Below are positions 7,289 through 30,972 of a stretch of 64,000 bases of DNA, in pieces (the first letter of the stretch is position 1; each line of letters opens with the position of its first letter). The DNA is from Lytechinus pictus (taxonomy: Eukaryota), in the NCBI RefSeq assembly GCF_037042905.1, contig NC_087250.1, forward strand, positions 23,808,001 to 23,872,000, given 5' to 3'. The notes under the pieces were generated by a model. It did not search any database. It was not told the origin of the DNA and worked only from the letters and a program-made list of their open reading frames with translations. A program made the translations under genes and the position numbers.

Positions 7289-10200
7289 TCAATCATTACT
7301 AGAACTGCTACTCTTCCGGTCTTTAATCATTTGTCGGTTGTTGAATGGTAATTGTGCTGGACCACCCTGAAAAACTTCCACACAATCGTCTCGTCGCATC
7401 CGCTTCAGGGCATCCTCAAGATCCTGAGGGCTACAGATCTTCTTCCGTTGCTCTGCAAGATTAATCAGATTCCCTGTAGGGTCTGTTAGATCTTCCAGAC
7501 TATCAATGACTTCCTCCATTCCTAAGGCAACGGCAAGACCTCTCCAATCGTCCAATGTTATGCGACGACCGTTCAACCGTTGACTGAGCTCCTGCCGGGT
7601 GATCACGGAGGGTTCCTGTGGCACGCCATGGCTGCCCGATGTAATGTTCACAGATTCAATATTGTAAACATTTCCATAAACTGACATACAGGAAATTTGC
7701 TGGCTGAGCTGCCTCACTTCTGAACCCACCGGTGTTGTAGGTTGTGAGCCTGGTTCAGTACTCATAAGGATTCTGGGGGATTCATCCATCGGCTGGGTGG
7801 AGTTGGTACCTGGGGTATAGAAATAAAATGGCTTTGAGTTACTTCTCATTTTGGGGTGAAGCAACATTTCTCATATAGCAATTGCTCCTACACTAAATTG
7901 TCTGAAGATTGAACTAATGTTATGTTGTTGTTGGATCTAATGCTCTTTTATTTTCAACCTGTCTTAAATGAAGACAACGCAATGCAGGATGTACAGTTTA
8001 TATATACATTATTTATTGAAGATGATTATAACTTGATGATGACAAATACATGAGTAAGTCTGATGGTGACTATACTCTGAAGTATACAAAATAGACTCTG
8101 CAAACTGATGTAATATAAATTGTAAACTCTTCTGTAGCTGTCTAAACCATTCTCAAGTCTATTCTCTATTCTGATTTGGGTTCAGAAGCGAACCCCTTTT
8201 ATATTTGTCTGGTCAAGACTCTCTACAGCCAAAAAGGTGTTGGTCAACCATAAACGCTTGACCAAAACAATCTGTACATCATAACTTTACTCTGAATTGG
8301 GGTAGTTGACCTTTTCGGGAGAACATGAAATGTAGTGAATAAGAAAACCATAAAATGTGTGTGCATCAGAAGTTTAGCTGGAAGAAGAATGAGTAATACT
8401 TTCTTAAGTAAGTTGGAATTGGTATACTTCCTGTAGAAGTATTGATTAAGTATTGATATATTATTGAATATGTGAGATATGCACAGGGGGCATGTGCCCC
8501 CCATTTTGAGAAGCAAAATAAAAAATTTGTAATGTAAAAATGCCATTAAATGAGAGGTGTGCCCCCTCTTTAGAAATTGAATACCTTTTTTTTTGCTTGT
8601 CAAAAATTTTCTCCTAAAAATTTGCCCCCCTTTTGGAAAATCCTGGATCCGCCCCTGTGCACAATGACAAGAGTTTGAAAGAAAAGACTAACCAACATCA
8701 GATGATGATTCTCCTTTCTTCCCCGCTTGACCCCTAATGGCTTTCCTCAAGCGCTCTTCGAGGTTACTATCATCGATATGTGCATTATTTAGAACCCGCA
8801 AGTGACGCGGAAGGTGTGTTTCGTCGCAGCATCGGATTACTATCACCCGGCCCTTCCAATTACCCCCATCCACCCTTGGATGTAAAGCCATGTGTGTCGT
8901 CATAGTCTGGTAAAGATCATCCGTATCACAATCCTCCTTTGTGATGATGAGGACTACGTGAGAGCAGGCCTCCAGAGCATCCTCGATGCTTATCATCTTT
9001 GGAACTCCAAGTACGGCATCCGCAGCGGTCACCAAAGTCCAGTTGTTTCTACTGATGATGTCTTTGACCTTACAAACGTGATTCGTCTCTTGGCTGAATT
9101 CAAGATAGATGTTACGTTCTGGCTCTCCTTGATCTGTCAAAGATCTATTTGTTCCAGAGTCCATGGAACCTTCAAAGAAAAGATGGAAAATAAAGAAATT
9201 CGTAAATATCAGTTATCTGATACTGAAAACAAGGTATAACCTGAAACTTCCAATCATGTTTTCTCTGTGTTTTACAATTTTCTTCTTAAAAATTCATTCT
9301 GATTAAATCAGGTAGTTGACTGGGTTTCAGTAGATCAATGTTGACAAGCTACATATTATTTCAAAGCTGAGACTCGGCTCCTTCAAACAATATCAAAATG
9401 TTAATTTCATGATAACTCTTTTTTTTCATTTCATTATTATCATTGTATTGTTTATTTGACCAATATAAAAAAGTACAAATACATACACCAGAAAAAAAAG
9501 AGTATACAAACATGCAAAGAAATATGGGAGCGGGAAGTGAGTCAGGGGTAGGCCAAGTCAGGGGGCACAAAAGTGAAATTTAACACTGTTGCCCGGAGGC
9601 ATGTGCCCAACACATGCCAGCCCGTATACATCAATAAATAAATTTACACAAAATATTGCACAATGAAAAATGGGAATGCAAAGAAAGGGGGGGGGGGGGC
9701 AAACAAAAAAATCAAAGAAGATAGAGATGTATTGGGAATACATGCGCATTTTTATCATTAGAGCCATTTCAGCAGGAGTAAATGAGAGAAGGCCATACTC
9801 ACCGAGGCTAGAAAATGATGAATCTCCAGAACCATCCACAGAGGTTGTAGCTTCCTGACTATTTGATACAGCCAGGTCTCGCTGTTGTTGACTTTCTCTG
9901 CATCTCTGATACTCTCTTATTTCTTCCTGTTGCTGTTTTTCAGCTTTAATTTAAGGCATGAATGAAAGAAGAATAACCAAGGGGACATTTTGACCTGTAA
10001 GTACGAGCCAACCTACAGACTGTACATTCTTCTACTACTAGAATCTTTATAAGAAAAGGGTCTGTGGCATGAATCAAAGACATGGGGTGGGGCTGAATTA
10101 ATGCACAAAATCAGACTTTGATGGTAATTTTAACAATTTCTGTACAATGTTCACTGAAACAGAGGATGCGCTGTAGCCCCCAAGGCACCCCCAGGGGCCG

Positions 10201-13200
10201 TGGAAGCGGGGGGCGGGCTTCAGCTCCCCACTTTTTTCCAATACTGTGTACAAAAGCATAAAAATAACCATATGATTGTGATTTTTTGCATGGTCAGCCC
10301 CCCCCCCCCCACTTTGAAAACCGTTCCGTGGCCCCTGCCCCCTTGAATTACATATGAGATTTAGAAAGTGGATGACTTACTTTTTATACAGGCCTGTGCC
10401 TTATTATACCAATAATAAAACAACAGTTTTGAAATGGAATCTAAAAAAAATTTCCCTTTCTCTCCCCCCCTCCCCATTTTGGATGCATACCTGGGCCCCG
10501 TCTTACAAAGAGTTAAGATTGATCCAATCAATGTGACTCTATGGAAATCCATCAGTGTCATGATTTTTTATACAGGAAATGTGCAAAATGTCCTTTGTAA
10601 ACTAAGGAGAACACACCAAATTATCAAGAAATCAATGAATTTAAATATACATATCTAGATTTTTTTTTTAACAGACATGGATTCTATATGTTGACTTTGA
10701 GCATTGGCTTTCCATAGTTGCGATTGATCAGATCAATCGCAACTCTTTGTAAGATGGGCTCCAGCACTTTTGTTTTTTTGTATATATTCTAATTTTGTGG
10801 AAATAAATGAAATGAAATTAATCTACTGGCACAGACCCTTAGTATTAATATCTAATGTAAAGTATGGAGATTAGATTCACTCTTGTACTGAACGGAAATT
10901 ATTCCTTTCTTTATCAAATCCTCCCTAAAGTTTCCGGGTGGGTGTTCCATAAAGCTCTTTGTAAAGTTACGCACAACTTAACGCACGATTGGAACATGTT
11001 CTTAGGTCATAAATCAATTACATATGGATAACACATAGCACAAGAAAGGATCACCAGTCGTGCATAAAGTCATTCATATCTTACGAACAGCTTCATGAAA
11101 CACCCATATTTAAGTGAGGGCCCTGGATTTATCAAGATATTCCCACTTGACTATAAATTAAAGTAATAAAAAAAATCACCTTTGGATTATTAGAAAAAAA
11201 AACAAGCAAACAGATTAAAAAAAAAAAATTGAATCATAATTCTGATGGCGAAATATGACTGGTTGCCAGATAAGACCCCCCCCCCATGTGGCTGCTCGCA
11301 ATACAAACAGAAGGTTTGATGGAGGTGACACGACATTAGCTCTTGCAACATTTGCTCTGGTCTTGATATCTCAGAGGTTAGGCTACTGGGTTAGAGTTAG
11401 GATTGTAATAGAGTTTTTTGTTCAGAATCATGTAAATATATTGATTAGGGTTTGGAGGTTGTTTTTTGGCTGCAGATTTTCCATCAGAGCAATTGTCGCC
11501 GGAGCAAATGTCAACTCATGGAACCCTGATGAAGTCTAGTCTCAAGACCCAAGACATGGTATACCTGTAAATCGTTAAATTTGAGTTTGCAATTGCAAAC
11601 TAACCTCTGACTAGTATTGTGTCTCTGATCATGAGAAGCTTGGCTCTTGTCATTGCATCACGCATCCTGCTCATCTGGTGTTCAGCTTGAACTGTTGCCC
11701 TCCAGGAAGTCAGCAAGTCAACCGTCCCTTTGGTTGTCACAGATCCAGTCAACCGATTGGTGGTGTTGCATTTGTTGATTTGAGCTCTGGTACAACCCAA
11801 GGCATTGGCTAAACGCTCCATCTGGTCATCGGTTTCCAGATTGTCGGCTATCTCTCGTAGGACGGTGCCCGATATCATCCCAGTGATAGGTCTGGAAGGA
11901 GTCAAGAAAAGAAAATGACCAAATAATATCAGCTTAACTTGCTTTAAAGGTAAGTCCACCCCAACAAAATGTTCATTTTATAAAGAAAATTTTATAAAAA
12001 GCATGAAGGTTTCATCAATGTCAGATGTTAAAGTTAAAAAATTCTTTAAAATAAGTTTTGCTTATTTTTCACAAAAAAATTTAGCCTATATGACATACTG
12101 GTCAGTATGCAAATGAGGGGACCAATGACATCACCCACTCACTATTTCTCTTGTAGTTTATGTGTAATATGAAATAATTTGATTTTCTCCTCATTGTCAT
12201 GTGATGCAAAGTTTTTCGCGCTCTGAATGGAAACATCAATAACACTTTGTGGATCAAACAAGAGGTTCTTCATTGTCAAATCTGTAAAAATGGAATTCAA
12301 ACAATAACAGACAAAAGAAAGGGTGAGTGACATCAGTGACTCTCTCATTTGCATGTCACTGAATTGTGCATATAGGCCTGACTGTTTTGTGACAAAAGCC
12401 ATAACTTTCTTATTTTACATCCTGATTTTGATAAAAATTTTCAGCATTAAATTTGTTTGATTTTTCTCTCTTAATTCAAATCTGGGTGGAATTGAATGCT
12501 AATTGTAGAGCTATATCTTTTTCCCCTCTGGTATAACTACACTATAGCCATGAGACCTGACCTATTCCTAGTGAAAGGGACATGGAATGGCCAAAAAAAA
12601 AATGAATGGGAAAAGTGTAGAGGACTAAGTTGTGGCATTCTGCTAAACAAAAATTGAATGACTTTGCATCAATCCTAATCTTTACCCAATGAGGGTCTAC
12701 TTTTTCTTTCTCAATGAACCCCAGTCAAATTGTAATCAACTTACTCTGGAATGTCACCAGGAGACTGTTTTAAAGATGACTGACTTGACTGTGCTGCTGG
12801 AATAAAGAAAGACAAAATTGTCATACATGCATGCATGAAACCAAAGTAATAATTATGATTATAATCCACTACATTTGTAAGGTACATGTTAAATACAAAT
12901 GTTTCTACGTGCAAAGTTGAATTAGAACACTTCCATAGCCAAATTATTTAATACACTAAATAATCATCTTTATTAACATTAATATGAAAATATTGATAAC
13001 ATAATATTGTGGACAATAAATACCTTAGTTATTCCTCATATTTGTACAGCAAATTTGGCATTATGCCCACAAAATCATTGATTTAGTGGGCGAAATCTCC
13101 TTATTTTGGGGGGTGAAAACCTCTTCTTATTGGGGGGCATGTAAAATGTTTCCTCGGGAAAATGTGCCCCGTTCGGAAAATCCTGGATCCGCCCCTGCAA

Positions 13201-15785
13201 TCAGTAGAGGCGCACGGCCAATATGGGAGACTCTCTCCAATAGGGGAGACAATCTCCCACATTGGAGACTAGCTTTGCAAAAGGACAAAAGAAACACCAA
13301 CAAAAACATGATTTTTTCCACCCAAAATGTTGTCTCACTTAGGTCAGAAGCCCATTTGTTTTGTGTGTGATTGACAACAAAAATCCTTATCAAAACAGAA
13401 GTAGACGGTGAATTTTTAAAGGGCCCAGCCACTGACAAATCATGGGGAAATTGAATCGATACGAAATTTGCAAAAGGCCAATTGACTTGCATAATATAAT
13501 CCGTCCGTCATGAGCGCCCGTCGGACTAATGCGATAAAAGTTTGGACAGCACGAATTTGACCGAACTCGTGATGGTTATTTACTTCGGATCGTCGCAGTT
13601 CCAGTTTCCAACAATCCCAATTTCTAGACTCATAACAGGTCTCTTGATTGCTAAACAAAAATAAATAACCTCTGTGAAGTTACATGTTTCAAAGTAAAAA
13701 CATGCAGTTTACTTCTGGTTGGTTAGTCTACTAAAACTAATGCTCTCCTAAAAACCTCCCAGACATGCCAGCGTCTATTACATAACACCCCCAGGCATGC
13801 AGCCGAGTCAAAGACTTGAATCCAGTCAGACCACAGGTCCCTATGCTAATGAGCAAATAGGCCAGATTCATCCAAAATTCCAAATCATCTCGTGGCTGAA
13901 TCCTCCTCCTGGCAAAATCTCGTGATTTGTGAGAAAGAATTTACCTGTTTTAACCTCTAGTTAAATGAAATATCATTGCACCATCAGATAGAGTAAATGT
14001 TATTCTTTCATATTGGTCATTTATTTTTTATACAACATTTTGATAAATAAGTAAATTTCTGGCCTGAAAATGTGCCTCAAAACTGAATTTTCTTCCTCTG
14101 TTTTCATTTGCAAATTGTGCAAATTTTTTATTTTGAGCCTTAATGATATATACATCACCATAAAGCTGAAGTTCTGTACTTTCTCACAATGCCATTCTTG
14201 ATATTCGGCACCTTTTAATCGGGTCAAGATCACACTTTTTCCACCAAGGTACAAGACGAGATTTCTGAAATTTTGTACTTGCATGAAATCCATGGGCCGA
14301 TTGCACGAAAGGGTCTTTCCAAGGACCGTCTTTCGTGTCGCCCATCTTTTATGATGCGCTATAAGCGGGGTGTTTCTGAAATTTATGATAAACAAATAAA
14401 ATTTGTAAGCTTGCTTTTAAATCAAATTTTATACGATTTCATGAGATATCACATCATTTTATAAACAAATATTTTGTTTATTTTAATGGACAAATAAAAT
14501 ATATTTCCAGATAATTTATTTGAAATGCGTTTCACATGGCGTATCATAAAAGATGGGCGACACGAAAGACGGTCCTTGGAAAGACCCTTTCGTGCAATCG
14601 GCCCCAGAGTTCTGATTGGCTGGATAAGGTTCACAGAACAACAGGCGCGGGTAATTTGAGGAGATTATACCACATGGGAAGTGTGACCTTCCCATGAACC
14701 CAGGCACTTGAACCGTTGGAATTTGCCATTGTGTGGTCTCTTTGACCAATCAGAGTGCAGTATTCTTGTTTTCAAGCTGCTTTATGTACTTGGACAATGA
14801 AAAAAGTGTGATCTTGACCCGATTAAACCAATTCTTATTTTCCCCATGATTTGTCAATGAAAGGTCGCTTTAAAGTAGACGGTGAATGACAAGGGGTAAC
14901 TTTTCATGAGGAATCTGCTTATCACATTTTTATTTGCCGCCAAGGTAATCCTTTTGCAGCAAATGTAAACAAACAAAATTGATCTCCAAACTGGAGACTG
15001 TCTCTGAAATTGGATACCCAAATTCTTTACAAAAGTCTCTGATAAAAATATGGAGATAATCTCCCACATTGGAGACAGTCTCCAATATTGGCCGTGCGCC
15101 TCTACTGGCAGTATGATTAAGTATGATTTGGACTCAATTTGGAGCCTTGATTCTGCCCGGCATCATTACATGGTCATGATCATTTCATTTCAAATTTCAG
15201 AAAGCATACACACGAAGGCAGTTTGAAAAAAAATAACTTTTCCATTTCAGAGCTGAAAAATATGAAAACTGACAGACTAAGCTGTCCATAGTCTACATAG
15301 AAATCTATTGGAGAGAGAAACACATATAAATTATCATACTAAAATTTAGTTCTAACGTTAGACCTCTTAATCTACTTTTGCCAAACGACCGCAATCATGA
15401 TGACATGCAGCGACAACTGTTTTCTCTTTTTTGATAATTCTTGTCTACCGGACCATGCTGAAAAAACAGTGAATCAATTATCAAGTTCAACATCAGGCCT
15501 TCACTTACCGGTATGCAATGAAGATGTATTGATTCTTAGTGAGGATAAAATTGCCTCAAGTGTGCTCCGCTTCGGCTCTGCCTCAGACAAATCCCTCCAT
15601 TCCCTCAAAATTTCAATAGTGCTTCTGAGGTAATCATTGTTCTTTTCAAGAAGTATTCTTTCCAAATTTCCAAGACTTTGTCCGAGTTTGAGTCCTAGAT
15701 CCTGATATAGATGATCAGAAACTTTCGAAGAACACACTTTCCTTGCTATCTCAAACAGTTCTTTATCAGTTATATGTGTATCCAT
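7289..15785 (-). CDS. Multi-death-domain TIR protein, DD-DD-TIR-(RHIM-like)-DD, 584 aa; exons 15785-15509, 12796-12745, 11891-11605, 9943-9803, 9169-8693, 7809-7289
   Basis: All introns are GT-AG with polypyrimidine tracts, and phases (1,2,1,1,1) give one open frame of 1755 nt from a good start context (AAACATGG). Exon 1 is DD-like (ITDKELFEIARKV...LYQDLGL...EILREWRD...LEAILSSL). Exon 3 is DD-like (GTVLREIADNL...LANALGC...DLLTSWR). Exon 5 is TIR (IYLEFS...DAVLG...IEDALEACSHVVLIIT...VIVI...LPRHLRVL). Exon 6 is a MyD88-type DD (ELSQRLN...DDWRGLAVALG...DPTGNLI...RRDDCV). Confidence 0.8.
10493..10763. mobile_element. Roughly 270-bp MITE family with GGGCCCCGTCTTACAAAGAGTT termini; further copies near 21665-21880, 31495-31770, 47262-47515, 49695-49950, 50940-51200 and 54540-54770
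   Basis: Near-identical internal sequence (CTCTATGGAAATCCATCAG...AAAGGAGAACACACCAAATT) and inverted ends (AACTCTTTGTAAGATGGG) recur about 7 times. Confidence 0.8.
10939..11105. mobile_element. Small MITE family (GGGTGTTTCATAAAGCTGTT...AACAGCTTTATGAAACACCC); copies near 31195-31365 and 50300-50465
   Basis: Inverted termini and a shared core (AAGGATCACCAGTCG) in three places. Confidence 0.7.
13202..15107. mobile_element. 1.9-kb non-autonomous TIR element in intron 1 of the minus DD-TIR gene, with a nested palindromic MITE (14294-14604); fragment at about 44695-44788
   Basis: TIRs CAGTAGAGGCGCACGGCCAATAT / ATATTGGCCGTGCGCCTCTACTG. The nested element has TIRs of about 55 bp starting GGGCCGATTGCACGAAAGGGTCTTTCCAAGGACCG. 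Confidence 0.8.
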
Positions 15786-15889
15786 GTTTGCTAACGCCGG
15801 TCTCTACGATCGACTCCAATTCCTCCCACTGCTATGCTCATCTAATGCTGAATAAACTGAGCTCAAATACTACACTAGTATAGTACAGG

Positions 15890-16281
15890 CACCGAGCAGC
15901 TAGCCCGGCCCCCAAGCGCGCCCCGCCCGTTCCCCGCCCCCGGCCCAGCTCGCACTCCATCTCCGGCCAGCTAGCTAGCGTCGCGTCGCGTCGAGCTGAG
16001 AGTTTTGAGCAGATCGATCCATCCAGTATCCAGCGCGCGAAAGATTTCTGGGGATTCCCCCGATTCCTAGTGTTATGTACGCATGCGCAGACTATACCAA
16101 AGCCGAGCTAGCGAGGCGCCTAGCCTGCCTGCCTGCCATTTCTACAGCTCGTAGTTGAACTCCCGCTTTTTAGTACTATACTAAGCCTCGGCCTACTAAA
16201 TTATTTGAAAACCACGTCAGAATCCGACTGAAGCAAGCCACGACTGAAGCCTGAAGGAAGGCAGACTCAATATTTCAGAGA
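15890..16281. promoter_or_regulatory. Putative bidirectional GC-rich promoter of the DD-TIR pair: GC boxes, NF-kB site (16050-16060), NRF1-like site (16079-16089) and probable non-coding exon 1 of the plus gene ending at 16281
   Basis: CpG-rich island in an AT-rich background, with CCCCGCCC twice, GGGGATTCCCC and ACGCATGCGCA. A plus-strand donor GA|GTGAGT is at 16282. The minus gene's ATG is at 15785. Confidence 0.6.
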
Positions 16282-16384
16282 GTGAGTAAAACTAAAAGAG
16301 TATAGGGCCTAGACTATAGGCTATAGCAGGCCTACTGCCAGACACAATAATGCCACTGCCAGCCAGGCCCAGGGCCAGGTAACT

Positions 16385-20675: not shown

Positions 20676-21353
20676 TTAACAAGTATTGGAAACAAAACGA
20701 TCATCTTGGCAAGTATTCCTTGAATCGAACCCCTAAACAAGTAAAGCGATATTTCAATTTTTCCAGACGTCGATCGGTCGTCAGTTTTACCTTTACCTAC
20801 ATCATTGGGTTTAGTACAGCCCTATGCACCTCCCACACCTCGCGCAAATCGTACTCTAAACACGTTGTGTTGACTCTTGGGGCAAAAAGTACATTGTTAT
20901 AAAAAATTTTAGTCTCAATTTTTTATACCCTCACAAATTTGACCCTAAACGCGTAGCTTTCCTAGCGAAAATAAATACCCTTTTTTCATTATTTTAGTGT
21001 TTTTGACACCCTTATTACGTTACGTACGTAACGTGCCCTGTCTTGAAAACTATATCCTTTTTAAGTGTTTTTTTGGTCGCGCATGGTATCCACTTGTCAA
21101 TGTAAGTGCCCCCCCCCCCCCTCGGGATTAAAATCAGGGAATTCTTGCCAAGAGTATCGTTTTGTTTCCAATACTTGTTAAGGGTAGGGTTTCACACGCC
21201 ATTACTTGTTAAGGAGTGCATTTTGAGAACATGGAAAATACGTGTTTAGGGTGCGTTTTGAGACCCGATGGTCGCACATGGTATCCACTCGTCAATGGAA
21301 GTTTAGATTCTATTTGTTTGATATCCAGGTGTATGCAAGCTGCAACTTGAGGA

Positions 21354-24300
21354 ATGACCTCTGAGGCACGGTCCCAGGTCCTCCGGAACGACCGGCTCAT
21401 GTACCAACTGGCAGAGACCATAGATGCCGTCAAGTACTACTTCCCCTTAGGTCGTGACCTTCTTGGCTCCCAGGCGGCCGTCTCCAACATCATCGGACGA
21501 ACAGAACCAGATTACCAGGAGATTGTCTTCAAATGTTTGTATACATGGAGGAATGCGAATGGGAAAGGAAAGGGAGAGAGACTGGTGGAGATATTCAAAG
21601 GTGTTGAGTTAGATAAAGTTGCAGCTTACTTAGAGCATGGTAAGAAAGGTTTATTCATTATGAGTCCAGTGGCTTGTCTTACAAAGAGTTACGATCGATC
21701 CGATCAACCTCGACTGTATGGAAATCCATTGACGTCACCAGTTTTTTCTTAGAAAAATTTGCGCAATGCCCTTTGTAAGCAAAGAGAAGCATTCTGAATT
21801 TTCAAGAAATCATTGAATGTATGAAATTACACCATATCTAATAAAACATTTCAAGCAAATGTGGATCGTAGGTGTTGATGTTGCTGGCTTTCCATAGTTA
21901 TGGTTGATTGGATCAATTGCAACTTTTTGTAAGATGGAACCCAAGGTTGTATTTTATATATCTCTTTGACAGGTGACCCTTTCTTGGGAGTTAATTCGGT
22001 TCCCTGACAATGAAAAATCTGTATGTTAAGCCAAGCATAAAACCCAACCTCCAAAACTTAACCGTAATCATCTTTACATTGTTCTGAACCAAAAACTCTA
22101 TTACAATCCCACCTCTAACCCTATGCCCTCTGAGATTTTAAGTCAGGAGCAAATGTCGCAGGAGCATGCATCATATCACCATTAAATCAGCCCTATTGAT
22201 AATTTGGGGGGGGGGGGTGAAGACAACTTCCAAGCATATGAAAATGACCCCTTGCACTGAGCTGAATTGTAATATTGTCAATAATTTTCAATCCTAGTAT
22301 AGAGCATATCATGTGATCTAACATGCACTCCCAAAGGGAATTGCCTATCAATATTATCCCAGCTATGGCTCAGAAAGCTTTGTGCAGTGCACAATCATTT
22401 CAAGGAATAAATTCCCGCCAGGTTCCTGTTTCCCTTGCCTGGGGGGGTGTTTCACAGAGATTTAAGTATGACTTGGAGGCGTGCTTAAATTCTGATACGT
22501 ACGTGATATGAAACGTGCAATCCTCTTTGCATGATCTTACCAATGAGGACTTACATTTTTTAGTACATGCAACTAGGCATTTATTAAAAGTGCGACTCCG
22601 TCATACTTAAATCTTTGTGAAACACCCCCCTGGGTTGAGTGCAGCACAGTGTGGATAAATTTTTTGCTGAAGACAATGACGTGGCTGGGATTTAAATTCT
22701 CATTGAATATCCAGGCCATTTGAATCACATTTTGTAATTTTAAAAATTGATCAAAATTAATTTGTGGAACACATTCAATCATGAAACCAATTGAATATAT
22801 TAGAATGAAAAACAATGAAATTATTTATGAGAAATTTACAAGAGAATGAATAATAGAAATTCAAGTTTGACATTTGTTTGTAAACTATGTTGCTGAAAAT
22901 GCTATCTGCCGAGTTTTGCAAAAGATTTGACATCAAAACACCAAGTTCAGGGAGATAATGACAAATTTGGAAATTATACATTCATCCCATCTTGTTTGCG
23001 AAAATCCATACATGTATACCAACACCCCTAATTTCACATGGATCTGTCATTTCGCAGTGCAATTTGACCTCCTCCCCAAAAAGCCAGTCAAAATATTGTT
23101 AATCTATTTTTTAAGTGATTTCCTTATTTTATCCTTCCATTATTTCCACTGAGTTTTGCAAAAGCTTTGCCATCAAAATACCAATTTCAGGGGAATGATA
23201 ACAAAATCAGAAACACATTCATGAGATTCATCCCATTTTGCACGATTTAATTGATCACAATGTTGTCTTATTCCTCAGTCCATTTCCCCTACTGCAGCCA
23301 TATGGCGAGTTGTACCAGCTACATATAGGTGGTTTGAATGAAAATGAATGAAACTGCCGTTTTCAATTCGGGAAATGTGACTGAGGCATCATCCTCTCTC
23401 ATTTTATCCTCCAGCACTTGCAAGAAACCCAAACTGCCTTGGTGAGGATAGATTCCTACAGAGTTTGGCATCAAAGATAGACTGTGCGTCAGTCTACAGG
23501 AAACTGGGCCTTCCTCTCTTGGACAACAACTCTGCAAGATTGTCAAACCTCATCGGTCCTCTGAATATTCAATTTACCCAGTACAAAGAAGCACTCTTTC
23601 AAGTAAGATTACACTGTCGTCATTGCTGTTGATATCATTATTGTGTGAATTGCCAATTTGTCTACTGCCAGCTCGTCCACTCACCAAACAGTCTACTTTC
23701 ATTTAGTCTTATAATGCTCTTCAATCCATCAACATTTCGTCTAACATCCATTTGGTCCAATCATCACTTCGTCTAATCACAATTTCGTCTATGACCATTT
23801 CGTCTCATAACCAGTTGGTCTAATATGCATTTCATTTTCATTCATTTGACAAAACTGACACTGTGCAATTAGACCAAATGGTATATGGACTAAATGGTAT
23901 TTGACCAACTGGTTAATAGACGAAATGGCAATTAGATCATGTGGATAGTGGATGAACTGATGGTAGTAGACCAGTTGGCAATTGGACGAATTGGAATGAA
24001 CTGTTGTCGTGTCTAAAAGCTTGTGTCCTGTGCATTATTTGCTATAAAGTTCTTACCTAGCTGCCAATGAAATGGAAACTCTTAAAAGAATGGTTTCAGG
24101 GGAAGCATAAATTTCAAAACATAAAGCCAATCTTTAATGCTTTTAAGGAATATGTGAGAAAACAAAAATTGATTATCATGATAAAAACAAATGAAAACTT
24201 CTTCAGAAAACCATATTAGATTTATGTGTGTGCATGTTAACTGATTATTATGTTAAACTGTATTTCAGTAATTTCTCAGGCTCTCCCAGTCAATGTAATC

Positions 24301-27300
24301 ATACCCAACAACCAGTAAGATTTCATGAGATAAAGTAAGATTTTTTAGTTGAAATCACAAGGAATTTACAATTTTTATACTATGTGCAGGATAATTCTAG
24401 TATACAAATAGCGAATAGGCATGAGTGCGATGGTGCGAGATTTCGCATGAGGTGAAAGAAAGATGCTCTATTCAATGAGGTGTTAGCCGAGTTGAATAGA
24501 GTGTTTCTTTCTTTCACCGAATGCGAAATCTTGCACCATTGCACGAATAAGAATATTCACTATTTGTGCTGTACAATGCCTCGGACTTTAGCGAAAACTT
24601 TTCCTGCAGTAATCTATGAAAAGGGAGCAAAATATTGAAAGCAAAAAGCAAATCCCACAAGCGCGCATGACCTTGGGCAGCATTGCACATGTAGCCAGCA
24701 AGCTATGCGCGTATTTCACCTTCATTTTTTACTGAAAGCAAAGAAATGAATCGTATTGTGACGTCACCTCCTAAATTTGTGCAACGGTACATTTTGGATG
24801 GTATGTCTTTTGTGCAACGGTACGAATGTTTGACATTCAGTCTCCCATTTGCTCGCGTACAACAAGCTAAGTAGGCGTTGTACAATATCCATAACGTAAG
24901 TAATAATAATTTCTGATTTTCATACTTCTCTGTAGGTACTGATTAGGTGGAGGAATCGAGAGGGGTCGTATCTAAAATCATTGGAATCACTAAAGAAGAC
25001 ACTCCTCAGACATGGTCTCAGTGATACTGCTCGACAGCTGCATCACATGGAATATGGACATGATTCTGGTAGGTTGTTTGGATCAACTAGATGAATTCAA
25101 CTACAACTAAGATTGATCTGTCTCCGGGCCTGTGCACAAGACCCCTCATATTTGGCCATCCCTGGGAAATATCATTGGCCGGGCCTATTTCATAAAACTT
25201 GTTATAATAGATTTTGCAATAATGATTATATGTGCATATATAAAGTTCAAGTCCACTTCAGAAAAATGTTGTTTTGAATCAATAGAGAAAAATCAGGCAT
25301 GCACAATGCTGAAAATTTCATCAAAATCGGATGTATAATAAGAAAGTTACAACATTTTAAAGTTTCACTTATTTTTCACAAAATTGCACAATTTAGTCAC
25401 ATGAATGCAAATGAGAGAATCGATGTCCTCACTATTTCTTTTGTTTTGTTATTGTTTGAATTATACAATATTAAAATTTTTACAGATTTGAGGTGGACTT
25501 GTCCTTTAATTTATCAGAAGTCTCTAAGTAAGTGCTCTACAATAATGTAGCATAATTTCCCAGGCTTAAGCAGAGCAGCTACTACCGTAAGGGCACTAGT
25601 ATTCAACCCGTTTGGAGAGTTTCCTCAAATATATAGAAATATAGAATTTACCTGAATTTCAGACCTGTCTTATTTCCAAGAGCAAATGCTGGTTATTCTT
25701 TTTCCGTTATTTTTTTATTCAACCAGTTGACTGTGTGCGTGGGCGATCGAATTATACGGCGATGGATTTTGGTACTAGTATTCAACCTGTCGGCACTAGT
25801 ATTCAACCTAGCGATGAAAGATGGCCCTGTCTCTCAATCTGTCCTTGTCCCATCCGACTATGGACTAGACCATTTGAGATGAGACCAAACAGGGAATTAA
25901 TCAAAGCCAGAGACTTACATAGATCTAGATCTAATTTATCAATCTAAACCCTTTTGAGATTTGCTATCAATCCTCACTAGGTTGAATACTAGTGCCATTC
26001 AGTGCAAAAGGCCATCGCCGCATAATTCGATCCTCCGCGCATACAGTTGACAGATTGACAAAGAAAATACCAATAACAGATTACCCTGGAAATAACAAAG
26101 GTATGAAATTAAGATAAATTCCCTATTTCTAAATATTTTGGGGATATGTCAAAATCTTTTAATTATGCCGGGTTGAATACTAGTACCCATACGGTACCTA
26201 CCCAGGGGGAGTTGGGTACTCGAATTATAACATGATACCAATTTGCTGCGCCAACTAAAAATAGGGGGCTCTGGAACTAAATCTTGGTCTTAAGGACGTT
26301 CCACAGTTAAAGTGAAATCCATGTCATTTTCACCAAACTTTGCACATAGATACTTTAGAACCTTAATATTCGAAATATGCAAAAATTAACATAGGTCCAT
26401 GTGCTTGATTTTTTGCTATAGAGCTTCAAAGTTCACCCAAATTGATGTTCTGAAGAATTGCGCATTCAAACGAATTTGGCATTTTTAGACCTCGCAAGAA
26501 TACTACAATGAGTTTAAACCTCTATTACTCAGTCAAAATACATGAAAAAGTCTTCAAATTTCGCAAGAGAGTTAATAATTGTATCGTTAGTTTAGAGAAT
26601 CTAATTGTTGTGCTATTTGTTTGCAACTTTAAGTCTAACAGCACAGTCAGTTCTTAAAAATGGCGTAAAAGATAACAAAAACCCAATCTCAAAAACGTGA
26701 AATTTCAATAACAGACTACAAAAGTACAATAAATGCTGCACTTTATTCAAAATCCATGTCATTTTCACCAAAATTTGCAAAGTTGTAGAGGAAGCTATAC
26801 TTAAGAGGTACAAACATTAAAAAATAGGGGTTCATGTGCTTGTTTTCAAACTATCAGCATTTTTATTAGAGCAAACGTGCTTTTTAAAATACAAAAAATG
26901 CGCCAAATGCTTTGTATCTATGTGAAGAAAAATCGAAACCACTCTACCATTTATTCAAACTCGGGGTCATATTCGTGATTCTTGGCAGTACTGCAGAGTA
27001 AAGTATTTTGAAATTGTAGAGATATTTTTTAAAATGGTCCATGGAATAATTCAATTTTTTTAGCTTCATAAAATAACGCATCGGATCTGCAGTTAGGATG
27101 CAGATGATGAGAAAAATCAGCTCATACCCACAGCTAATTAATCACCTGTTCATCCATTGTGACGTCAGCGCGCGGAGTGTTAAATATGCGCAGATCATAA
27201 TGCGCACAAACATAACTGTGGAACGTCCTTAAAACGTGGGTCTCCAGAACTCATTAGATCGTAGGCGTAAAACGCGCGCGCGTCTTGCTAGATTCATATC

Positions 27301-30300
27301 GGGCCAGCGCAACCTAGCTGCAGGCGCGGGGGAACTTCAGCGGGCCGGCATAATGGCTTCGCGCCTATTGAGCTTGCCACTCTGACCAGCTGAGTCGATC
27401 ACGCGTCATGATGGGCACTCTCTGGAGCGAGAAATCACAAATTTAAGGGTCTCCGGAACAAGAAAAAATGGGAATTTCTATGGCTTTCTGAATTGGTGAT
27501 GCTCTGGAATGGAAATTTTGGACGAAAATGGGGGTCTCAACCGCGGCACATACGTATAATAAATTTATACTGAGGACCCCCCTCCCCCCACAACATACAC
27601 TAACTTGATATGGCAAAGCTTGTAAACTCAAGTACTAGATGAAGTCAGAGAGAGTCTATAAGCATGCATATTTCAAAGGAGTGTTTTACTGATTTGCTAC
27701 AACTAAGATTGATCTGTTAATTTGTTGTCCCATTGAAACAGATATTTACAATCATTTGTAAATAGTAAGCTTATCTCTTTAGGTAAATTAGTTAGGCCTC
27801 TGGTCCATGTAACCATCATTATGTTCCTCTATCATTGAAAATAGTATACCCCACCCAGTGGTGGACCGAGACACGGAGGAGACAATGATTGGAGGGGCAC
27901 TGTATTGTTTGTGAACAATCGCTGTGCCCCTCCGGGTCACGGTCCGCCACTGTCCTCACTGCTATAACACAGAAACCTAATGTATTTCAGTTGGGGTATC
28001 GCAACCCTGATTTTCGTTTTCCTTGTTTACAGAGTGGTCAGCACCTCGCAGATTCCCATGAGAGATTATGGTATTAGATTGCAGCTGTTCTTTTTGTTTT
28101 CTGACGTAGTAGTGTAAACAAACTCTTACTGGGGCTCCGCTTTTAAAGGAAAGGAAAAGTAGGAAATAGATATTTTACTTGTTTAAGGGTAATTTTATAT
28201 TCAAAAGTTACTCATGATTTAGAGGAAGACCTAACTGAAAGTTTGAATGAAGCGAAATGATCCAAAAGTGGCGATATAAACAATATTAACTAAAACTGGA
28301 CCGCTGACTTGCAATGTGCTCTCTAGCTCCCTCAATTGTGGTTATCTCTCTCTCTCTTTCCCGGTGAAGGTTGCTTCTCCAGGGGAGCATTTCATCAATA
28401 TTTTCATCCGACAAGTTGTCAGATCTGACATCTTTCCATGATTTTGATTGGCTGAGAGGCACTGTTCCTATGGTAACTGTCGGATAAAATGGGACTTGTC
28501 AGATAAAACATCCGACAAGTCCTTTCATGAAACGCCCCCCAGGAGTAGGATTGCATTGCACAGTGTGTGTTTACGTTAGGTTTAGGTGTCCAGTAGTGGT
28601 GGATGCCAAAAATGGGTTTCAGCATTAAAGGATAGGTTGTCGTCGTGCACAATGGTCAGCAACTTATCACTAATTTGTAAGAACAATTCTGATTGGTCCC
28701 TGGTCAGTCTTCTGAGCAAAATGCGCATGCAACAATGATCTTGATAGGCTATTTCAGTAGTGATTACCTCTGTGCTACTTCAACATGATCTGTATTTCTT
28801 CTTTTTATTTTGATGAACTTTAGGCCCCATGGAATTAACTGAAAATGACTGCAAAGAGGAAAGCACTCCTAGCTTTATAGATGAGAAGATGGAGACCGAC
28901 GGTCCTTCAGCGAACAGCGCCCTCTCTCAAGAACAATTCTATGACATTTATCTCTATGCATCGTCAAAGGACACGCAGTATTTTCTAGCCATGGAACAGC
29001 TCATACATAGAATAGGATGGAAGATGACTTCGTGTTTTGATCTTGAACTGGGTGAACCGGTGATGGGAAGCATAGAAAAGGCTCTACTGAAATGTTCTCA
29101 CGTCGTGTGTTTGATTACGAGAGATGATTGCAATCAGGTCAACGTCGAACGAACGATGACGATCGAGATGACCTTTCAGTCGCTCGAGGATAAAGGATTG
29201 TCCAGAAGTCTTATTCCGATATACTGTGGTGTGCCGAAATCTGCCCTACCGCTATCGCTAAGAGCGCTGAGAGGAGCCAGTATTGACGACCATGACCTTG
29301 AAAAGTTATTGAGGAATAGTATTGATGAGAGCATCCGTAAAAAGAGGGAAGAGGAATTTCGCAACATTTCAGGTGAGCTGGACAAAGGCTAGTAACATAC
29401 ATTACACGATAGGAATAGGACACAATTTTTTAAACACATTTTGCACTGAATAAAGGAGGTTCAAACGAGTATTCACTTGAAGTTAAGCATATTGCGGGGA
29501 ATACTAAAATCAGAATTCTGCTTTTCCACATGCCACAAACCTTTGTGGTCAGAGTAAAGTCAAAATTGGCTTCTTGTCATAGCCAGTGTTGACGTCTCTA
29601 CTATTTGGATTCAAATTTGCTTTTCTACAGGAAGGCTCAAAGTAGACTGGAATTTTTATTGTAGTATTTATACCACTATTTTGATTTTATAGGTTGGAAT
29701 TTTCATATTAAATGCAATCACAATCGGATCCAAATTGATTGTTTAGTGTGTGCAAGGCTTTACATTGTAAGGAAAAATTACACACATACATGTAAGGAAT
29801 TCAGACTCATTTTAATACAGTAATTAACTTCTCAGCTCTCCAGCATATGTACCAACTATGAGTGTCCTGATATTTTTAGATATTTTTCTTAGAAAATATT
29901 GATGCAAAACCTCTAAATCCCAGTCAATAGAATTATTTTCCAATCTTTTTATCTTGGAAATAGGCCAGGGTATTTTGGGAGATCATAAGGGGGGGGGGGG
30001 GGCTCCCAGGCCTGACTTGAGATTGGAGGTTGTCTGAGACATAATCTACAAAATTGTATTGTAATTTATTTCATGAAAATTGCTATTAATTATGCTAATT
30101 TATGTGTAATCAGTATGCAAAATCATACTTTGTCCTCTTACTCCCTATAAGATAAAGTTCAAAATGTTCTAATTTTGGGGGCAGGCACTCTTTGTGGTGT
30201 TCCTAGTAAGTATGAAAAAATTGTGATATCAGATCAATTTCTAATGTACTATATTGTTCTTTGCAATTTCTTATATATTTCCTTTTTTACCTTTTGTTTT

Positions 30301-30972
30301 TCATTGTTTTTTCGATGAAATTTGTTGGGGACTCGTATGAGATCATAAAAAGCATAAAATAAATCTATTTAGACCAGCAAAACTAAATAATCATACATTT
30401 ATGATTTTTGGTTGATTATATAATTTGCATTGACTTTGTACACATAATCATGTTTTTGAGCAATTTTTGGTCTGAGATGCAATGTTGCGTAATTTGGGAA
30501 CCGTGTACCCGGTCTCAAAAGATGCGCAAGAATTGAAAGTAAAAAGTCTGTGAGCAGCGCGGTAAAAAATGTTGTGCAAATCGTAGGACTAGATAGGGTC
30601 AAGTCTTGTTTCGGCCAGGAGATAGCATACATGCTTTGTTTCTACCTGGGGGATGGGAGGGACGAGGGGGGGGGGGGTGGCAAAGATGACTTTCCTAACA
30701 GCATTTTGATGACTTTAATTTCTTTGATGTCTGGTTTCCGATTCTTGTCACCATAAGGACAACGGGTGACCTTTGACTGTTACAAATTTTTGCATCTGCT
30801 TGCTAGTTTTGAGAACATTGTAAAAAATATATTTAAATGGCACTTTTTTTTTCTTAGAAATAACCCTTTATCTCTCTCTATCCACCCCCCCCCCAACACA
30901 GAACTGAGCACCCATACAGACGCCAATGATCCTCTACCATTGATCTCATCAAGCGAGGCAACATTCCAATGA
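21354..30972 (+). CDS. Tandem death-domain TIR protein, DD-DD-TIR-tail, 408 aa; coding exons 21354-21639, 23415-23602, 24936-25068, 28824-29372, 30902-30972
   Basis: Acceptor at 21328, with an in-frame TGA two codons before ATG 21354. GT-AG introns with phases 1,0,1,1 give a 1227-nt frame. DD1 is NDRLMYQLAETID...LGRDLLG...FKCLYTWRN. DD2 is split over two exons: EDRFLQSLASKID...LGLPLL...EALFQ|VLIRWRNREG...LKKTLLRHGLSDTARQL. TIR is FYDIYLYAS...FDLELG...IEKALLKCSHVVCLIT...LIPIY...LPLSLRAL. The last exon is the least certain. Confidence 0.8.
23648..24000. repeat. Interspersed repeat built of CCATTTGGTC/ATTTCGTCTA units with inverted halves; second copy at about 33515-33890
   Basis: AATTGCCAATT..GTCTA...ACCATTTCGTCTCATAACCAGTTGGTCT...ATTAGACCAAATGGTA is shared by both copies. 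Confidence 0.7.
25585..26194. mobile_element. Tc1/mariner-pogo-like MITE with TA target duplication
   Basis: TA|CCGTAAGGGCACTAGTATTCAACCC at the left and GGGTTGAATACTAGTACCCATACGG|TA at the right; internal copies of ACTAGTATTCAACC. Confidence 0.75.
26294..27228. mobile_element. TTAA-flanked (Kolobok-like) non-autonomous element
   Basis: TTAA|GGACGTTCCACAGTT at the left and AACTGTGGAACGTCC|TTAA at the right. Confidence 0.8.
28381..28540. mobile_element. Roughly 160-bp MITE; second copy at about 57897-58053
   Basis: TTTTCATCCGACAAGTTGTCAGAT...GATTGGCTGAGAGG...CCGACAAGTCCTTTCATGAAACGC is present at both sites. Confidence 0.7.

What the first reader, a model, noticed from the sequence alone, without database searches (positions are those of the whole stretch)
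7289..30972. Head-to-head pair of paralogous DD-DD-TIR genes: candidate co-regulated innate-immune signalling module
Seen in sequence: two intact spliced genes face away from one GC-rich island. Both encode two N-terminal death domains followed by a TIR domain in a single phase-1/phase-1 exon (starting GSMD and GPME). The TIRs align at roughly 35-40% identity by eye (IEDALEACSHVVLIIT vs IEKALLKCSHVVCLIT; LPRHLRVL vs LPLSLRAL; IDDSNLE vs IDDHDLE), which points to an old inverted duplication. Their C-termini differ: RHIM-like plus DD in one, a short tail in the other. Established: MyD88 is DD-TIR, TICAM/TRIF has TIR plus RHIM, and plant paired NLRs such as RPS4/RRS1 sit head-to-head. Inference: the two proteins may work as a pair with different outputs. 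I do not recognise this architecture from a named adaptor family.
Basis: partly seen in the sequence, partly recalled or inferred. Interest (0 to 1): 0.9.

Follow-up and report, generated by a model that had tools for sequence, protein, structure and literature searches.

The report
Divergent pair of death-domain–TIR adaptors
Two neighbouring sea-urchin genes driven by one two-way promoter encode immune-type adaptor proteins (death domains plus a very divergent TIR domain) from an unnamed echinoderm family, whose slower-evolving members look like relatives of the vertebrate TRAM/TRIF adaptors.

Summary
The window is Lytechinus pictus. The two genes reproduce RefSeq "uncharacterized" proteins LOC129263084 (minus strand, 583/584 aa) and LOC129263083 (plus strand, 408 aa), with GT-AG at every intron. 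Stranded RNA-seq shows both are expressed. Their transcription starts lie about 140 bp apart in a CpG island, which makes a bidirectional promoter. The head-to-head layout also occurs in S. purpuratus.

Structure prediction confirms a TIR fold in both proteins. It also confirms two canonical death domains (DD2 and DD3) in the minus protein. The remaining N-terminal death domains are only weakly supported. The "RHIM-like" motif is a conserved short motif but lacks the RHIM core.

The two genes are not sister duplicates. They sit in different subclades of a sea-urchin-only radiation with at least 8 loci in this genome. That radiation belongs to a rare echinoderm/hemichordate TIR family: 38 representatives among 1.84 billion proteins.

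The family's slower-evolving members are TIR-DD proteins of sea stars, sea cucumbers and urchins, plus a TIR-RHIM protein of an acorn worm. These match human TRAM/TRIF TIRs far better than MyD88 or TLR TIRs. The literature I could read places the origin of TICAM in chordates.

For the window genes the TICAM link is indirect. Whether the two proteins bind each other is untested.

The parts
15509..15963 (-). Minus gene (LOC129263084) exon 1. The 5'UTR runs from about 15963; the CDS is 15785..15509. It encodes DD1, a putative six-helix death-like domain.
   Evidence: CDS model. RNA contig covering 15509-15963 and strand-specific depth. Six helices at low pLDDT. pLM neighbours are all Death clusters (0.89). 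hhalign to DD2 E=1.7e-3 and to the plus death domains E=8e-4.
12745..12796 (-). Minus gene mini-exon (52 nt, or 49 nt from the alternative NAGNAG acceptor at 12793). It encodes the A(A)QSSQSSLKQSPGDIPE linker.
   Evidence: Junction 11891>12745 in contigs and raw reads, and a 52-nt gap in the 2198-nt contig. Isoforms X1/X2 reproduced.
11605..11891 (-). Minus gene exon encoding DD2, a death domain.
   Evidence: Pfam Death E=1.7e-4, 22.1 bits (cut-off 22.6). AF2 pLDDT 88-95. RIPK1 DD Z 11.7 and FADD DD Z 11.4.
9803..9943 (-). Minus gene exon encoding a Q/E-rich long helix (residues about 196-238) and linker. Phase 1/1.
8693..9169 (-). Minus gene TIR exon. Phase 1/1; begins G|SMD.
   Evidence: TIR_2 at only 15.7 bits. 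AF2 beta-alpha fold. Z 12.8 to Hydra TRR-2 TIR, 11.6 to MyD88, 11.5 to TRAM.
7289..7809 (-). Minus gene last coding exon. It holds a disordered linker, the conserved motif SVYGNVYNIESVNI (7684..7643), the C-terminal death domain DD3 (about 7603..7361) and the stop codon at 7289-7291.
   Evidence: Pfam Death 32.2 bits. UNC5H2 DD Z 12.0, rmsd 1.9 A. Linker pLDDT 23-45. Motif conserved in Lp/Lv/Sp. Coordinates. This exon is unique in the genome.
15700..16300 (.). Shared CpG-rich bidirectional promoter. The minus TSS is near 15963 and the plus TSS near 16105-16119.
   Evidence: GC 0.53-0.60 and CpG o/e 1.0-1.3. Opposite-strand RNA coverage on the two sides.
16105..16281 (+). Plus gene (LOC129263083) non-coding first exon. 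The donor GT is at 16282.
   Evidence: Covered only by first-mate-on-minus reads (depth 8-21). It sits at the end of contigs of 1313 and 1540 nt, with a 3-nt over-run (GTG) that matches the start of the exon at 21329..
21329..21639 (+). Plus gene exon 2 (CDS from 21354). It encodes death-like repeat 1.
   Evidence: Internal repeat with DD2, 33-38% identity. Weak Pfam Death in 5 of 7 family repeats, best E 0.0069.
23415..23602 (+). Plus gene exon 3. First part of death-like repeat 2.
24936..25068 (+). Plus gene exon 4. Second part of death-like repeat 2.
28824..29372 (+). Plus gene TIR exon. Phase 1/1; begins G|PME.
   Evidence: TIR_2 at 23.2 bits (below the cut-off of 28). Best structural matches are human TRAM TIR Z 14.5/14.0, TRIF 13.3, MyD88 13.1.
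30902..30972 (+). Plus gene last coding exon. Encodes a 23-residue tail and the stop codon.

Best explanation
These are two intact, expressed Lytechinus pictus genes, transcribed in opposite directions from one CpG-rich bidirectional promoter. Each encodes a cytosolic adaptor with no signal peptide, membrane span or enzyme domain.

The minus-strand protein reads: death-like domain, death domain, long helix, TIR, disordered linker with a conserved short motif, C-terminal death domain. The plus-strand protein reads: two death-like repeats, TIR, short tail.

Both belong to a sea-urchin-specific, fast-evolving radiation inside an echinoderm/hemichordate TIR family. The older members of that family are TIR followed by a C-terminal death domain (echinoderms) or TIR followed by a RHIM (acorn worm). 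Those older members have TRAM/TRIF-type TIR domains.

Inferred mechanism, not shown here:
- The TIR docks onto the TIR of an activated Toll-like receptor or of another adaptor.
- The death domains then nucleate a helical, Myddosome-like oligomer that recruits death-domain kinases or other adaptors.
- The shared promoter makes the two proteins appear together.
- The short plus protein could modulate or bridge, and the long minus protein could be the signalling platform.
- An obligate partnership is not shown.
For: Gene models and identity.

Expression, strand, junctions and transcription starts about 140 bp apart.

CpG island.

Folds:
- TIR Z 12.8 (minus) and 14.5 (plus).
- DD2 Z 11.7 to RIPK1 DD.
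- DD3 Z 12.0 to UNC5H2 DD.
- Pfam Death for DD3 above its cut-off.

Family:
- Only 38 representatives at E<=1e-3 among 1.84 billion proteins. Every one that carries a source name is an echinoderm or hemichordate protein; many of the rest are unnamed.
- At least 8 TIR exons of the family in this genome.
- The tree gives an echinoid-only group B (support 98/94), with the two genes in separate subclades, and a sister group A (96/88).
- Group B against group A by hhalign: E=5.8e-21. Against generic TIRs: 4e-16.

TICAM link:
- Echinoderm group A profile against all PDB sequences: TICAM2 1.6e-11 (47 bits), TICAM1 4e-6, best non-TICAM TIR 2.6e-4, MyD88 6.6e-3.
- With the acorn-worm protein added: TICAM2 1e-14.
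- Acorn-worm TIR alone: TICAM2 2.4e-12, next TIRAP 8.5e-4.
- A generic TIR used as control ranks TLR2/15 and MyD88 first, with no TICAM at E<=1e-5.
- A mixed group A plus group B profile still ranks TICAM2 first, 38 bits against 27.
- The plus TIR model matches TRAM best.
- Its nearest named language-model cluster is TICAM2, at 0.89, which is only a lead.

Conservation of the pair: the same head-to-head layout in S. purpuratus. In L. variegatus the two genes have adjacent LOC numbers on one chromosome and promoter segments are conserved.
Against: - A profile of the urchin-specific TIRs alone finds no solved TIR by sequence (TLR5 at E=1). The TICAM assignment of the window genes is therefore transitive.
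- The structural Z scores of TRAM, TRIF, MyD88, Hydra TRR-2 and bacterial TIRs lie within about 1.5 of each other.
- No tree including vertebrate TICAM, MyD88, TIRAP and TLR TIRs could be built.
- DD1 and the plus-protein death domains have low pLDDT and only weak profile support.
- No functional, induction or binding data exist.
- TIR-TIR complex prediction gave no answer.
- In L. variegatus the two promoter segments lie 3.4 kb apart, so a tight bidirectional promoter may not be universal.
- The splice from 16281 to 21329 is inferred from contig ends, not read directly.
Confidence: 0.6

Rival explanations
1. Obligate heteromeric pair. The two proteins function only together, either as a sorting adaptor plus signalling adaptor (like TRAM-TRIF or MAL-MyD88) or as a sensor-helper pair (like head-to-head plant NLRs). 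The shared promoter would exist to keep their stoichiometry.
For: - Head-to-head layout with starts about 140 bp apart, and similar RNA depth of the two first exons in two libraries.
- Orientation kept in S. purpuratus.
- Complementary architectures: one protein has an output death domain, the other does not.
Against: - They are not sister paralogs, and each has closer relatives at unlinked loci.
- Bidirectional promoters are common and do not imply binding.
- TIR-TIR complex prediction gave no answer.
- No co-variation or interaction data exist.
Confidence: 0.2
2. They are lineage-specific MyD88 paralogs ("MyD88-like" expansion). They would work exactly as MyD88 does, with a TIR of MyD88 descent.
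For: - Death domain(s) lie N-terminal to the TIR, as in MyD88.
- The whole plus model aligns end to end with MyD88 predictions in Swiss-Prot (E about 3e-5).
- Echinoderms are reported to have several MyD88-like genes (PMC7075850).
Against: - Family profiles score MyD88 TIR 20-30 bits below TICAM2.
- The ancestral order in the family is TIR then death domain, the reverse of MyD88.
- TIR_2 and TIR HMMs that detect MyD88 easily fall below threshold here.
Confidence: 0.12
3. The TIR domains are NAD-cleaving enzymes (SARM1 or bacterial type), and the death domains only control their assembly. The genes would be cell-death executors rather than scaffolds.
For: TIR models align with SARM1, SPARTA and bacterial NADase TIRs at Z 11-13, similar to scaffold TIRs. 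Most family members keep a glutamate in the MT-x-E-MA motif.
Against: That glutamate is H in the minus protein and G in its C12 paralog. In the family alignment it does not line up with the canonical position after the WC/W-x motif. Sequence affinity is to non-enzymatic adaptor TIRs.
Confidence: 0.05
4. They are not immune genes. They would be death-domain scaffolds of a developmental or neuronal pathway; UniProt auto-names the S. purpuratus ortholog "Netrin receptor UNC5".
For: DD3 is most similar to the UNC5H2 death domain (Z 12.0, 25% identity).
Against: There is no ZU5, UPA, Ig or transmembrane part. TIR is present. The orthologs diverge fast (Lp against Sp 48% identity) and the family is a lineage-specific expansion, which is typical of immune genes.
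Confidence: 0.03

Closest known systems
TICAM family (TICAM1/TRIF and TICAM2/TRAM; amphioxus bbtTICAM)
   Same: - They are cytosolic TIR adaptors.
- The TIR domains of the slower-evolving relatives match TRAM and TRIF specifically by sequence.
- The plus-gene TIR model matches TRAM best.
- An oligomerisation module lies C-terminal to the TIR in the ancestral members. The acorn-worm member has a perfect RHIM core, VQIG..N.
- A long/short adaptor pair recalls TRIF/TRAM.
   Different: - The window proteins carry death domains, in front of and behind the TIR. They have neither the TRIF N-terminal domain nor a RHIM.
- Their own TIRs are too divergent to hit TICAM directly.
- No myristoylation-type N-terminus is evident.
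- The literature read here places the origin of TICAM in chordates (PMC9440496, PMC11788365).
MyD88
   Same: Death domain plus TIR in one cytosolic adaptor. The expected mechanism is TIR recruitment followed by a helical death-domain oligomer.
   Different: - There are two N-terminal death-like domains instead of one, and a third C-terminal one in the minus protein.
- The TIR is not of MyD88 type (19-27 bits against 47-58 for TICAM2).
- The ancestral domain order of the family is reversed.
Head-to-head paired immune genes (e.g. plant RPS4/RRS1)
   Same: Divergent orientation from a short shared promoter, conserved across species. Both partners carry TIR domains.
   Different: There are no NB-ARC or LRR sensor parts and no integrated decoy. 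Heteromerisation is not shown. The resemblance concerns genome layout only.
RHIM adaptors (RIPK1/RIPK3/TRIF/ZBP1; Drosophila IMD cryptic RHIM)
   Same: A short conserved beta-prone motif, S-[VI]-x-G-N-V-[YF]-[NH]-[IM], lies in a disordered linker next to a death domain.
   Different: The core tetrad [IV]-Q-[IV]-G is absent, and the spacing to the conserved N differs by one residue. No Pfam RHIM hit.

Membership tests
Death domain (Pfam PF00531 / death fold) | HMM match above the curated cut-off, or a six-helix bundle superposing on solved death domains. | tested here: met
   - DD3: 32.2 bits against a cut-off of 22.6; UNC5H2 DD Z 12.0, rmsd 1.9 A.
- DD2: 22.1 bits, just below the cut-off; RIPK1 and FADD DD Z 11.4-11.7 at pLDDT about 90.
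Death domain (Pfam PF00531 / death fold) | The same criterion applied to DD1 of the minus protein and to both repeats of the plus protein. | tested here: inconclusive
   - No Pfam hit for DD1. It has six predicted helices but pLDDT 48-67. hhalign to DD2 gives E=1.7e-3. Its pLM neighbours are Death clusters at 0.89.
- Plus repeats: Death in 5 of 7 family repeats, best E 0.0069; pLDDT 25-90; pLM 0.87.
TIR domain | Pfam TIR or TIR_2 above the curated cut-off. | tested here: not met
   TIR_2 scores 15.7 bits (minus) and 23.2 bits (plus) against a cut-off of 28. Sea-star, L. variegatus and acorn-worm relatives do pass, at 29.1-44.1 bits.
TIR domain | Flavodoxin-like beta-alpha fold superposing on solved TIR domains over most of the domain. 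| tested here: met
   - Minus: Z 12.8, 117 of 125 residues, rmsd 2.5 A (Hydra TRR-2).
- Plus: Z 14.5, 148 of 155 residues (TRAM).
- Dozens of TIR chains follow at Z 11-14.
TICAM (TRIF/TRAM) family | A TIR domain specifically closer to TICAM1/2 than to other TIR classes. | tested here: inconclusive
   - Met for the slower-evolving relatives: TICAM2 47-58 bits against at most 32 for any non-TICAM TIR.
- For the window genes the support is only transitive: hhalign of group B against group A E=5.8e-21; the mixed profile still ranks TICAM2 first; TRAM is the best structural match for the plus TIR but tied with others.
- The group B profile alone finds nothing.
TICAM (TRIF/TRAM) family | RHIM C-terminal to the TIR (TICAM1), or an N-terminal acylated membrane anchor (TICAM2). 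| tested here: not met
   The window proteins have no [IV]Q[IV]G core and no Pfam RHIM hit. Their N-termini are death-like domains. The acorn-worm relative P0034 does have the VQIG..N core.
MyD88 family | A single N-terminal death domain plus a C-terminal TIR of MyD88 type. | tested here: not met
   The N-terminus has two death-like domains. The MyD88 TIR scores 19-27 bits against 47-58 for TICAM2 with family profiles.
RHIM | Core tetrad [IV]-Q-[IV/L]-G followed by x-x-N in a stretch of about 18 residues. | tested here: not met
   The motif is SVYGNVYNI in Lp, SVHGNVYHI in Lv and NIHGNVFNM in Sp. None has the Q-[IV]-G core.
Bidirectional (head-to-head) gene pair | Opposite strands with transcription starts less than 1 kb apart. 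| tested here: met
   The minus transcript reaches 15963, and the plus first exon starts at 16105-16119. Read strands are opposite on the two sides.
Bidirectional (head-to-head) gene pair | The arrangement is conserved in other species. | tested here: met
   - S. purpuratus locus L010: the plus ortholog lies on the minus strand (7366..3713) and the minus ortholog on the plus strand (10001..14684).
- L. variegatus: the two genes carry adjacent LOC numbers on the same chromosome, and promoter segments are conserved but lie 3.4 kb apart.
Enzymatic TIR (NADase) | A catalytic glutamate in the conserved structural position, and NAD cleavage. | not tested
   Only alignment-level inspection was done. 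No residue-level structural superposition or assay was available.

The most novel reading that the evidence does not exclude
The whole family, including this pair, would be the echinoderm/hemichordate branch of the TICAM (TRIF/TRAM) lineage. TICAM-type adaptors would then date back to the deuterostome ancestor rather than to chordates. Echinoderms would have replaced the RHIM output (still present in an acorn worm) by death domains. Sea urchins would then have expanded the family. This conserved head-to-head pair would act as a TRAM-like/TRIF-like two-adaptor module that couples TLRs to death-domain signalling.
Probability: 0.3. Interest if true: 0.8.

Novelty: new variant of a known kind. Interest (0 to 1): 0.6.

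Why it matters
Sea urchins carry tens to hundreds of Toll-like receptor genes (68 listed for L. variegatus, 222 for S. purpuratus). The reviews I could read list only MyD88 as their adaptor (PMC6043800). They place the MyD88-independent TICAM adaptors no earlier than amphioxus (PMC9440496, PMC11788365).

This locus belongs to a TIR adaptor family that standard HMM thresholds miss. It is restricted to echinoderms and hemichordates. Its conservative members have TRAM/TRIF-type TIR domains joined to death domains.

If this holds, it supplies candidate second adaptors for the expanded echinoderm TLR repertoire. It moves the origin of the TICAM lineage deeper. It also shows RHIM and death-domain outputs being exchanged on one TIR scaffold. 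The conserved bidirectional pair is a compact, testable unit for promoter, knock-down and binding experiments in a tractable embryo.

Tried and rejected
- Direct splice of exon 1 to the DD2 exon. Rejected because the phases do not fit. This was resolved by the 49/52-nt mini-exon.
The real acceptor is at 7809, inside the long open frame.
- hhalign of DD1 and of the plus death domains against the C-terminal death domain: no signal.
- PDB sequence search with the urchin-only TIR profile: nothing useful.
- The profile A7 was contaminated by generic TIRs and did not discriminate. It was replaced by the clean profiles A9 and A10.
- Search for relatives of the acorn-worm protein in the 5.8-billion-protein set: none.
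- Full-length relatives of the minus protein: only Lp, Lv and Sp, so alignments for folding were shallow.
- The look-up of encoding contigs for P0039 and P0057: not on record.
- Complex prediction of the two TIR domains: score 0.12 against a mark of 0.34, verdict "no answer". This is neither for nor against binding.
- Rfam: no RNA family in the window.
- Earlier scan notes on this genome mention other multi-death-domain proteins but nothing on this locus. They did not affect the reading.
- Hibino 2006, Rast 2006 and Yang 2011 could not be read. An earlier mention of these genes as "orphan TIR" or "MyD88-like" therefore cannot be excluded.


Full report
**What is there**

The window is a sea-urchin chromosome segment (G000:C6:23.81-23.87 Mb). 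Translated exons are identical to Lytechinus pictus RefSeq proteins.

Assembling the exons with canonical GT-AG sites reproduces two proteins exactly:
- LOC129263084 on the minus strand: 584 aa isoform X1 and 583 aa isoform X2. The two isoforms differ by a NAGNAG acceptor at 12796/12793.
- LOC129263083 on the plus strand: 408 aa.

Without it, exon 1 (which ends in phase 1) cannot join the DD2 exon (which starts in phase 2). Both TIR exons are phase 1/1. They are 37% identical (E=1e-25).

**Expression and promoter**

In two stranded RNA-seq runs the minus-gene exons are covered only by pairs whose first mate lies on the plus strand. The 16.1-16.28 kb segment is covered only by the opposite kind.

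The junction 11891>12745 is present in two assembled contigs and in 16 raw reads. One 2198-nt contig carries DD2, 52 further letters and exon 1.

The minus transcript extends to 15963. The plus-strand exon begins at 16105-16119 and lies at the end of contigs of 1313 and 1540 nt.

Those contigs apparently end at 16284. That is three letters (GTG) past the GT donor at 16282. It is what is expected if the exon is spliced to the exon after the acceptor at 21328, which begins GTGTATG. This is indirect evidence, but it is specific.

The two starts are thus about 140 bp apart. They lie inside a segment with GC 0.53-0.60 and CpG o/e 1.0-1.3, against 0.375 and 0.61 for the window.

**Domains**

*Pfam alone is weak.*
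- Death passes its cut-off only for the C-terminal domain of the minus protein (32.2 bits).
- DD2 is just below its cut-off (22.1 bits against 22.6).
- TIR_2 is below threshold in both proteins (15.7 and 23.2 bits against 28).

*AlphaFold2 on family alignments gave clearer results.*

For the minus protein:
- six helices at residues 7-93, at low confidence;
- a confident six-helix bundle at 118-192;
- a long helix at 196-238;
- a beta-alpha domain at 272-408;
- a disordered stretch at 404-478;
- a confident six-helix bundle at 479-558.

Structural comparison of these parts:
- 269-403 matches TIR domains: Hydra TRR-2 Z 12.8, MyD88 11.6, TRAM 11.5.
- 111-208 matches RIPK1, FADD and RAIDD death domains: Z 11.3-11.7.
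- 479-561 matches the UNC5H2 death domain: Z 12.0, rmsd 1.9 A.

For the plus protein only the TIR is confident. Its best matches are human TRAM (Z 14.5 and 14.0), then Hydra TRR-2 13.6, TRIF 13.3 and MyD88 13.1. These rows are close to tied.

*The other death domains are supported only weakly.*
- The two plus-protein repeats are internal duplicates, 33-38% identical.
- Five of seven family repeats give weak Pfam Death hits, best E 0.0069.
- DD1 of the minus protein aligns in register with DD2 (E=1.7e-3) and with the plus repeats (E=8e-4).
- Language-model neighbours are Death clusters at 0.87-0.89, which is only a lead.

"DD-DD-TIR" is therefore probable but not proven for the first domain of each protein.

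**The "RHIM-like" stretch**

A short motif in the disordered linker is conserved in L. pictus, L. variegatus and S. purpuratus: S-[VI]-x-G-N-V-[YF]-[NH]-[IM]. It lacks the [IV]-Q-[IV]-G core. Pfam RHIM was not hit. It is a conserved linear motif, not a recognisable RHIM.

**Family**

A profile of eight TIR exons of this genome found only 38 proteins at E<=1e-3 among 1.84 billion representatives. Those that carry names come from:
- sea urchins (Lytechinus, Strongylocentrotus, Diadema);
- sea stars (Patiria, Acanthaster);
- a sea cucumber, a crinoid and an acorn worm.

All are annotated "uncharacterized".

The tree of the TIR domains has two parts.
- Group B (support 98/94) holds the named sea-urchin proteins and unnamed ENA/Logan fragments. 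It contains the two window genes in different subclades. The minus gene sits with its Sp and Lv orthologs and a paralog on contig 12. The plus gene sits with its orthologs and a cluster at C6:27.0-27.9 Mb.
- Group A (support 96/88) has longer-lived members: TIR followed by a C-terminal death domain in sea stars, sea cucumbers and L. variegatus, and the acorn-worm protein.

The pair is therefore old, since it predates the Lytechinus-Strongylocentrotus split. It is not a pair of sister duplicates.

DD3 of the minus protein aligns better with the C-terminal death domains of the TIR-DD proteins (E=5e-4) than with DD2 (E=0.037). This fits an ancestral TIR-DD module to which N-terminal death domains were added.

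**Link to a named family**

A clean profile of the echinoderm group A TIRs was searched against all PDB sequences. The results were:
- human TICAM2 (TRAM): 1.6e-11, 47 bits;
- TICAM1 (TRIF): 4e-6;
- best non-TICAM TIR: 2.6e-4;
- MyD88: 6.6e-3.

Adding the acorn-worm protein raises TICAM2 to 1e-14. That protein alone gives TICAM2 2.4e-12 against TIRAP 8.5e-4.

The acorn-worm protein has a helical N-terminal region, a TIR, a long coiled coil and a perfect RHIM core (GNVQIGDANVI). That is a TRIF-like layout.

As a control, a generic TIR from the same hit list ranks TLR2/15 and MyD88 first, with no TICAM at E<=1e-5.

Group B relates to group A at hhalign E=5.8e-21, against 4e-16 for generic TIRs. 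A profile of 6 group A and 12 group B sequences still ranks TICAM2 first, 38 bits against 27. Group B alone finds no solved TIR.

The TICAM affinity is therefore well supported for the family's conservative members. For the window genes it is transitive, helped by the TRAM-first structural ranking and by the TICAM2 language-model neighbour.

The papers I could read place the first TICAM in amphioxus and list only MyD88 for echinoderms (PMC9440496, PMC11788365, PMC6043800). A 2008 survey found sea-urchin TIR domain combinations close to the human set (PMC2575513). That fits a family that falls below HMM thresholds. I could not read Hibino 2006, Rast 2006, Tassia 2017 or Yang 2011.

**Conservation of the arrangement**

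In S. purpuratus the two orthologs are head to head, with 2.6 kb between start codons. The distance in L. pictus is 5.6 kb. There, about 1.8 kb of 31-nt tandem repeats sit in the first intron of the plus gene.

In L. variegatus the orthologs have adjacent LOC numbers on one chromosome, and PIGV follows the plus gene as it does here. Segments of the L. pictus island are found 10 kb and 6.5 kb upstream of the plus start codon, 3.4 kb apart. The orthologs diverge fast: Lp against Sp is 48% identical for the minus protein.

**Mechanism (inferred)**

These are TIR/death-fold adaptors. The TIR would be recruited to an activated receptor or adaptor TIR. The death domains would build a helical oligomer that recruits death-domain kinases or adaptors.

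The shared promoter predicts co-expression. The depth of the two first exons is similar in both libraries. Whether the two proteins bind each other is unknown. The single complex prediction gave no answer.

**Verdict**

The genes are already annotated models, but they belong to an undescribed family with a plausible and testable TICAM connection.

Noticed in passing
not in the window: protein P0034 (Ptychodera flava XP_070542427, 1140 aa): This acorn-worm "uncharacterized protein" has a TRIF-like layout: a helical/TPR-like N-terminus, a TIR that hits human TICAM2 at 2.4e-12 (next is TIRAP at 8.5e-4), a long coiled coil and a perfect RHIM core (GNVQIGDANVI). It has no relatives in the 5.8-billion-protein set.
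   Followed up: partly
not in the window: P0022, P0029, P0051, P0050, P0037: Sea-star, sea-cucumber and L. variegatus proteins have a long disordered N-terminus, a TICAM-type TIR and a C-terminal death domain. This order is the reverse of MyD88.
   Followed up: partly
window 17025-18826: About 1.8 kb of tandem repeats (31-nt unit ATTTCCAGTTACCCAACTGGTTCCAGTTAGG, with higher-order periods of 52-279) lie inside the first intron of the plus gene, between the shared promoter and the first coding exon.
   Followed up: no
window 13200-15100: Intron 1 of the minus gene holds repeat-derived sequence with very high RNA and contig depth on both strands, and many internal joints. It looks like dispersed transposon copies, not part of the gene.
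   Followed up: no
window 12793-12796: A NAGNAG alternative acceptor gives the 583- and 584-aa isoforms. The 52-nt form is the one in the 2198-nt RNA contig.
   Followed up: yes
window 19050-19550 and 27100-27550: Two further CpG-rich patches (GC 0.52-0.58, CpG o/e 1.0-1.4) lie inside introns of the plus gene. They could be transposons or alternative promoters. No RNA data were laid there.
   Followed up: no
window 36060-37361 (-), 52702-53073 (+), 46-1440 (+), 41438-42310 (+): Neighbours: a single-exon PIG-V mannosyltransferase (E=2.8e-75), an Ada3/TADA3 exon (E=1e-15) and two LINE reverse-transcriptase fragments. PIGV is also next to the plus-gene ortholog in L. variegatus.
   Followed up: partly
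L010 (S. purpuratus) and protein P0009: The older S. purpuratus model XP_011672607 (554 aa) has a second pair of death-like repeats. Its second half is only 54-64% identical to the locus fetched, where a 330-aa product is called. It is probably a chimera with, or evidence of, a further paralog.
   Followed up: no
L011 1-10000 (L. variegatus): The two conserved pieces of the promoter island are 3.4 kb apart. A LINE element (endonuclease plus RT ORFs, 4980-8142) sits in the first intron of the plus-gene ortholog.
   Followed up: partly
G000:C6:27.03-27.86 Mb (L003-L005) and protein P0001: This is a cluster of close paralogs of the plus-gene TIR on the same chromosome. One (P0001, 699 aa) fuses the TIR to a coiled coil and a long C-terminal region that looks repeat- or propeller-like. 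Pfam finds nothing in it.
   Followed up: no
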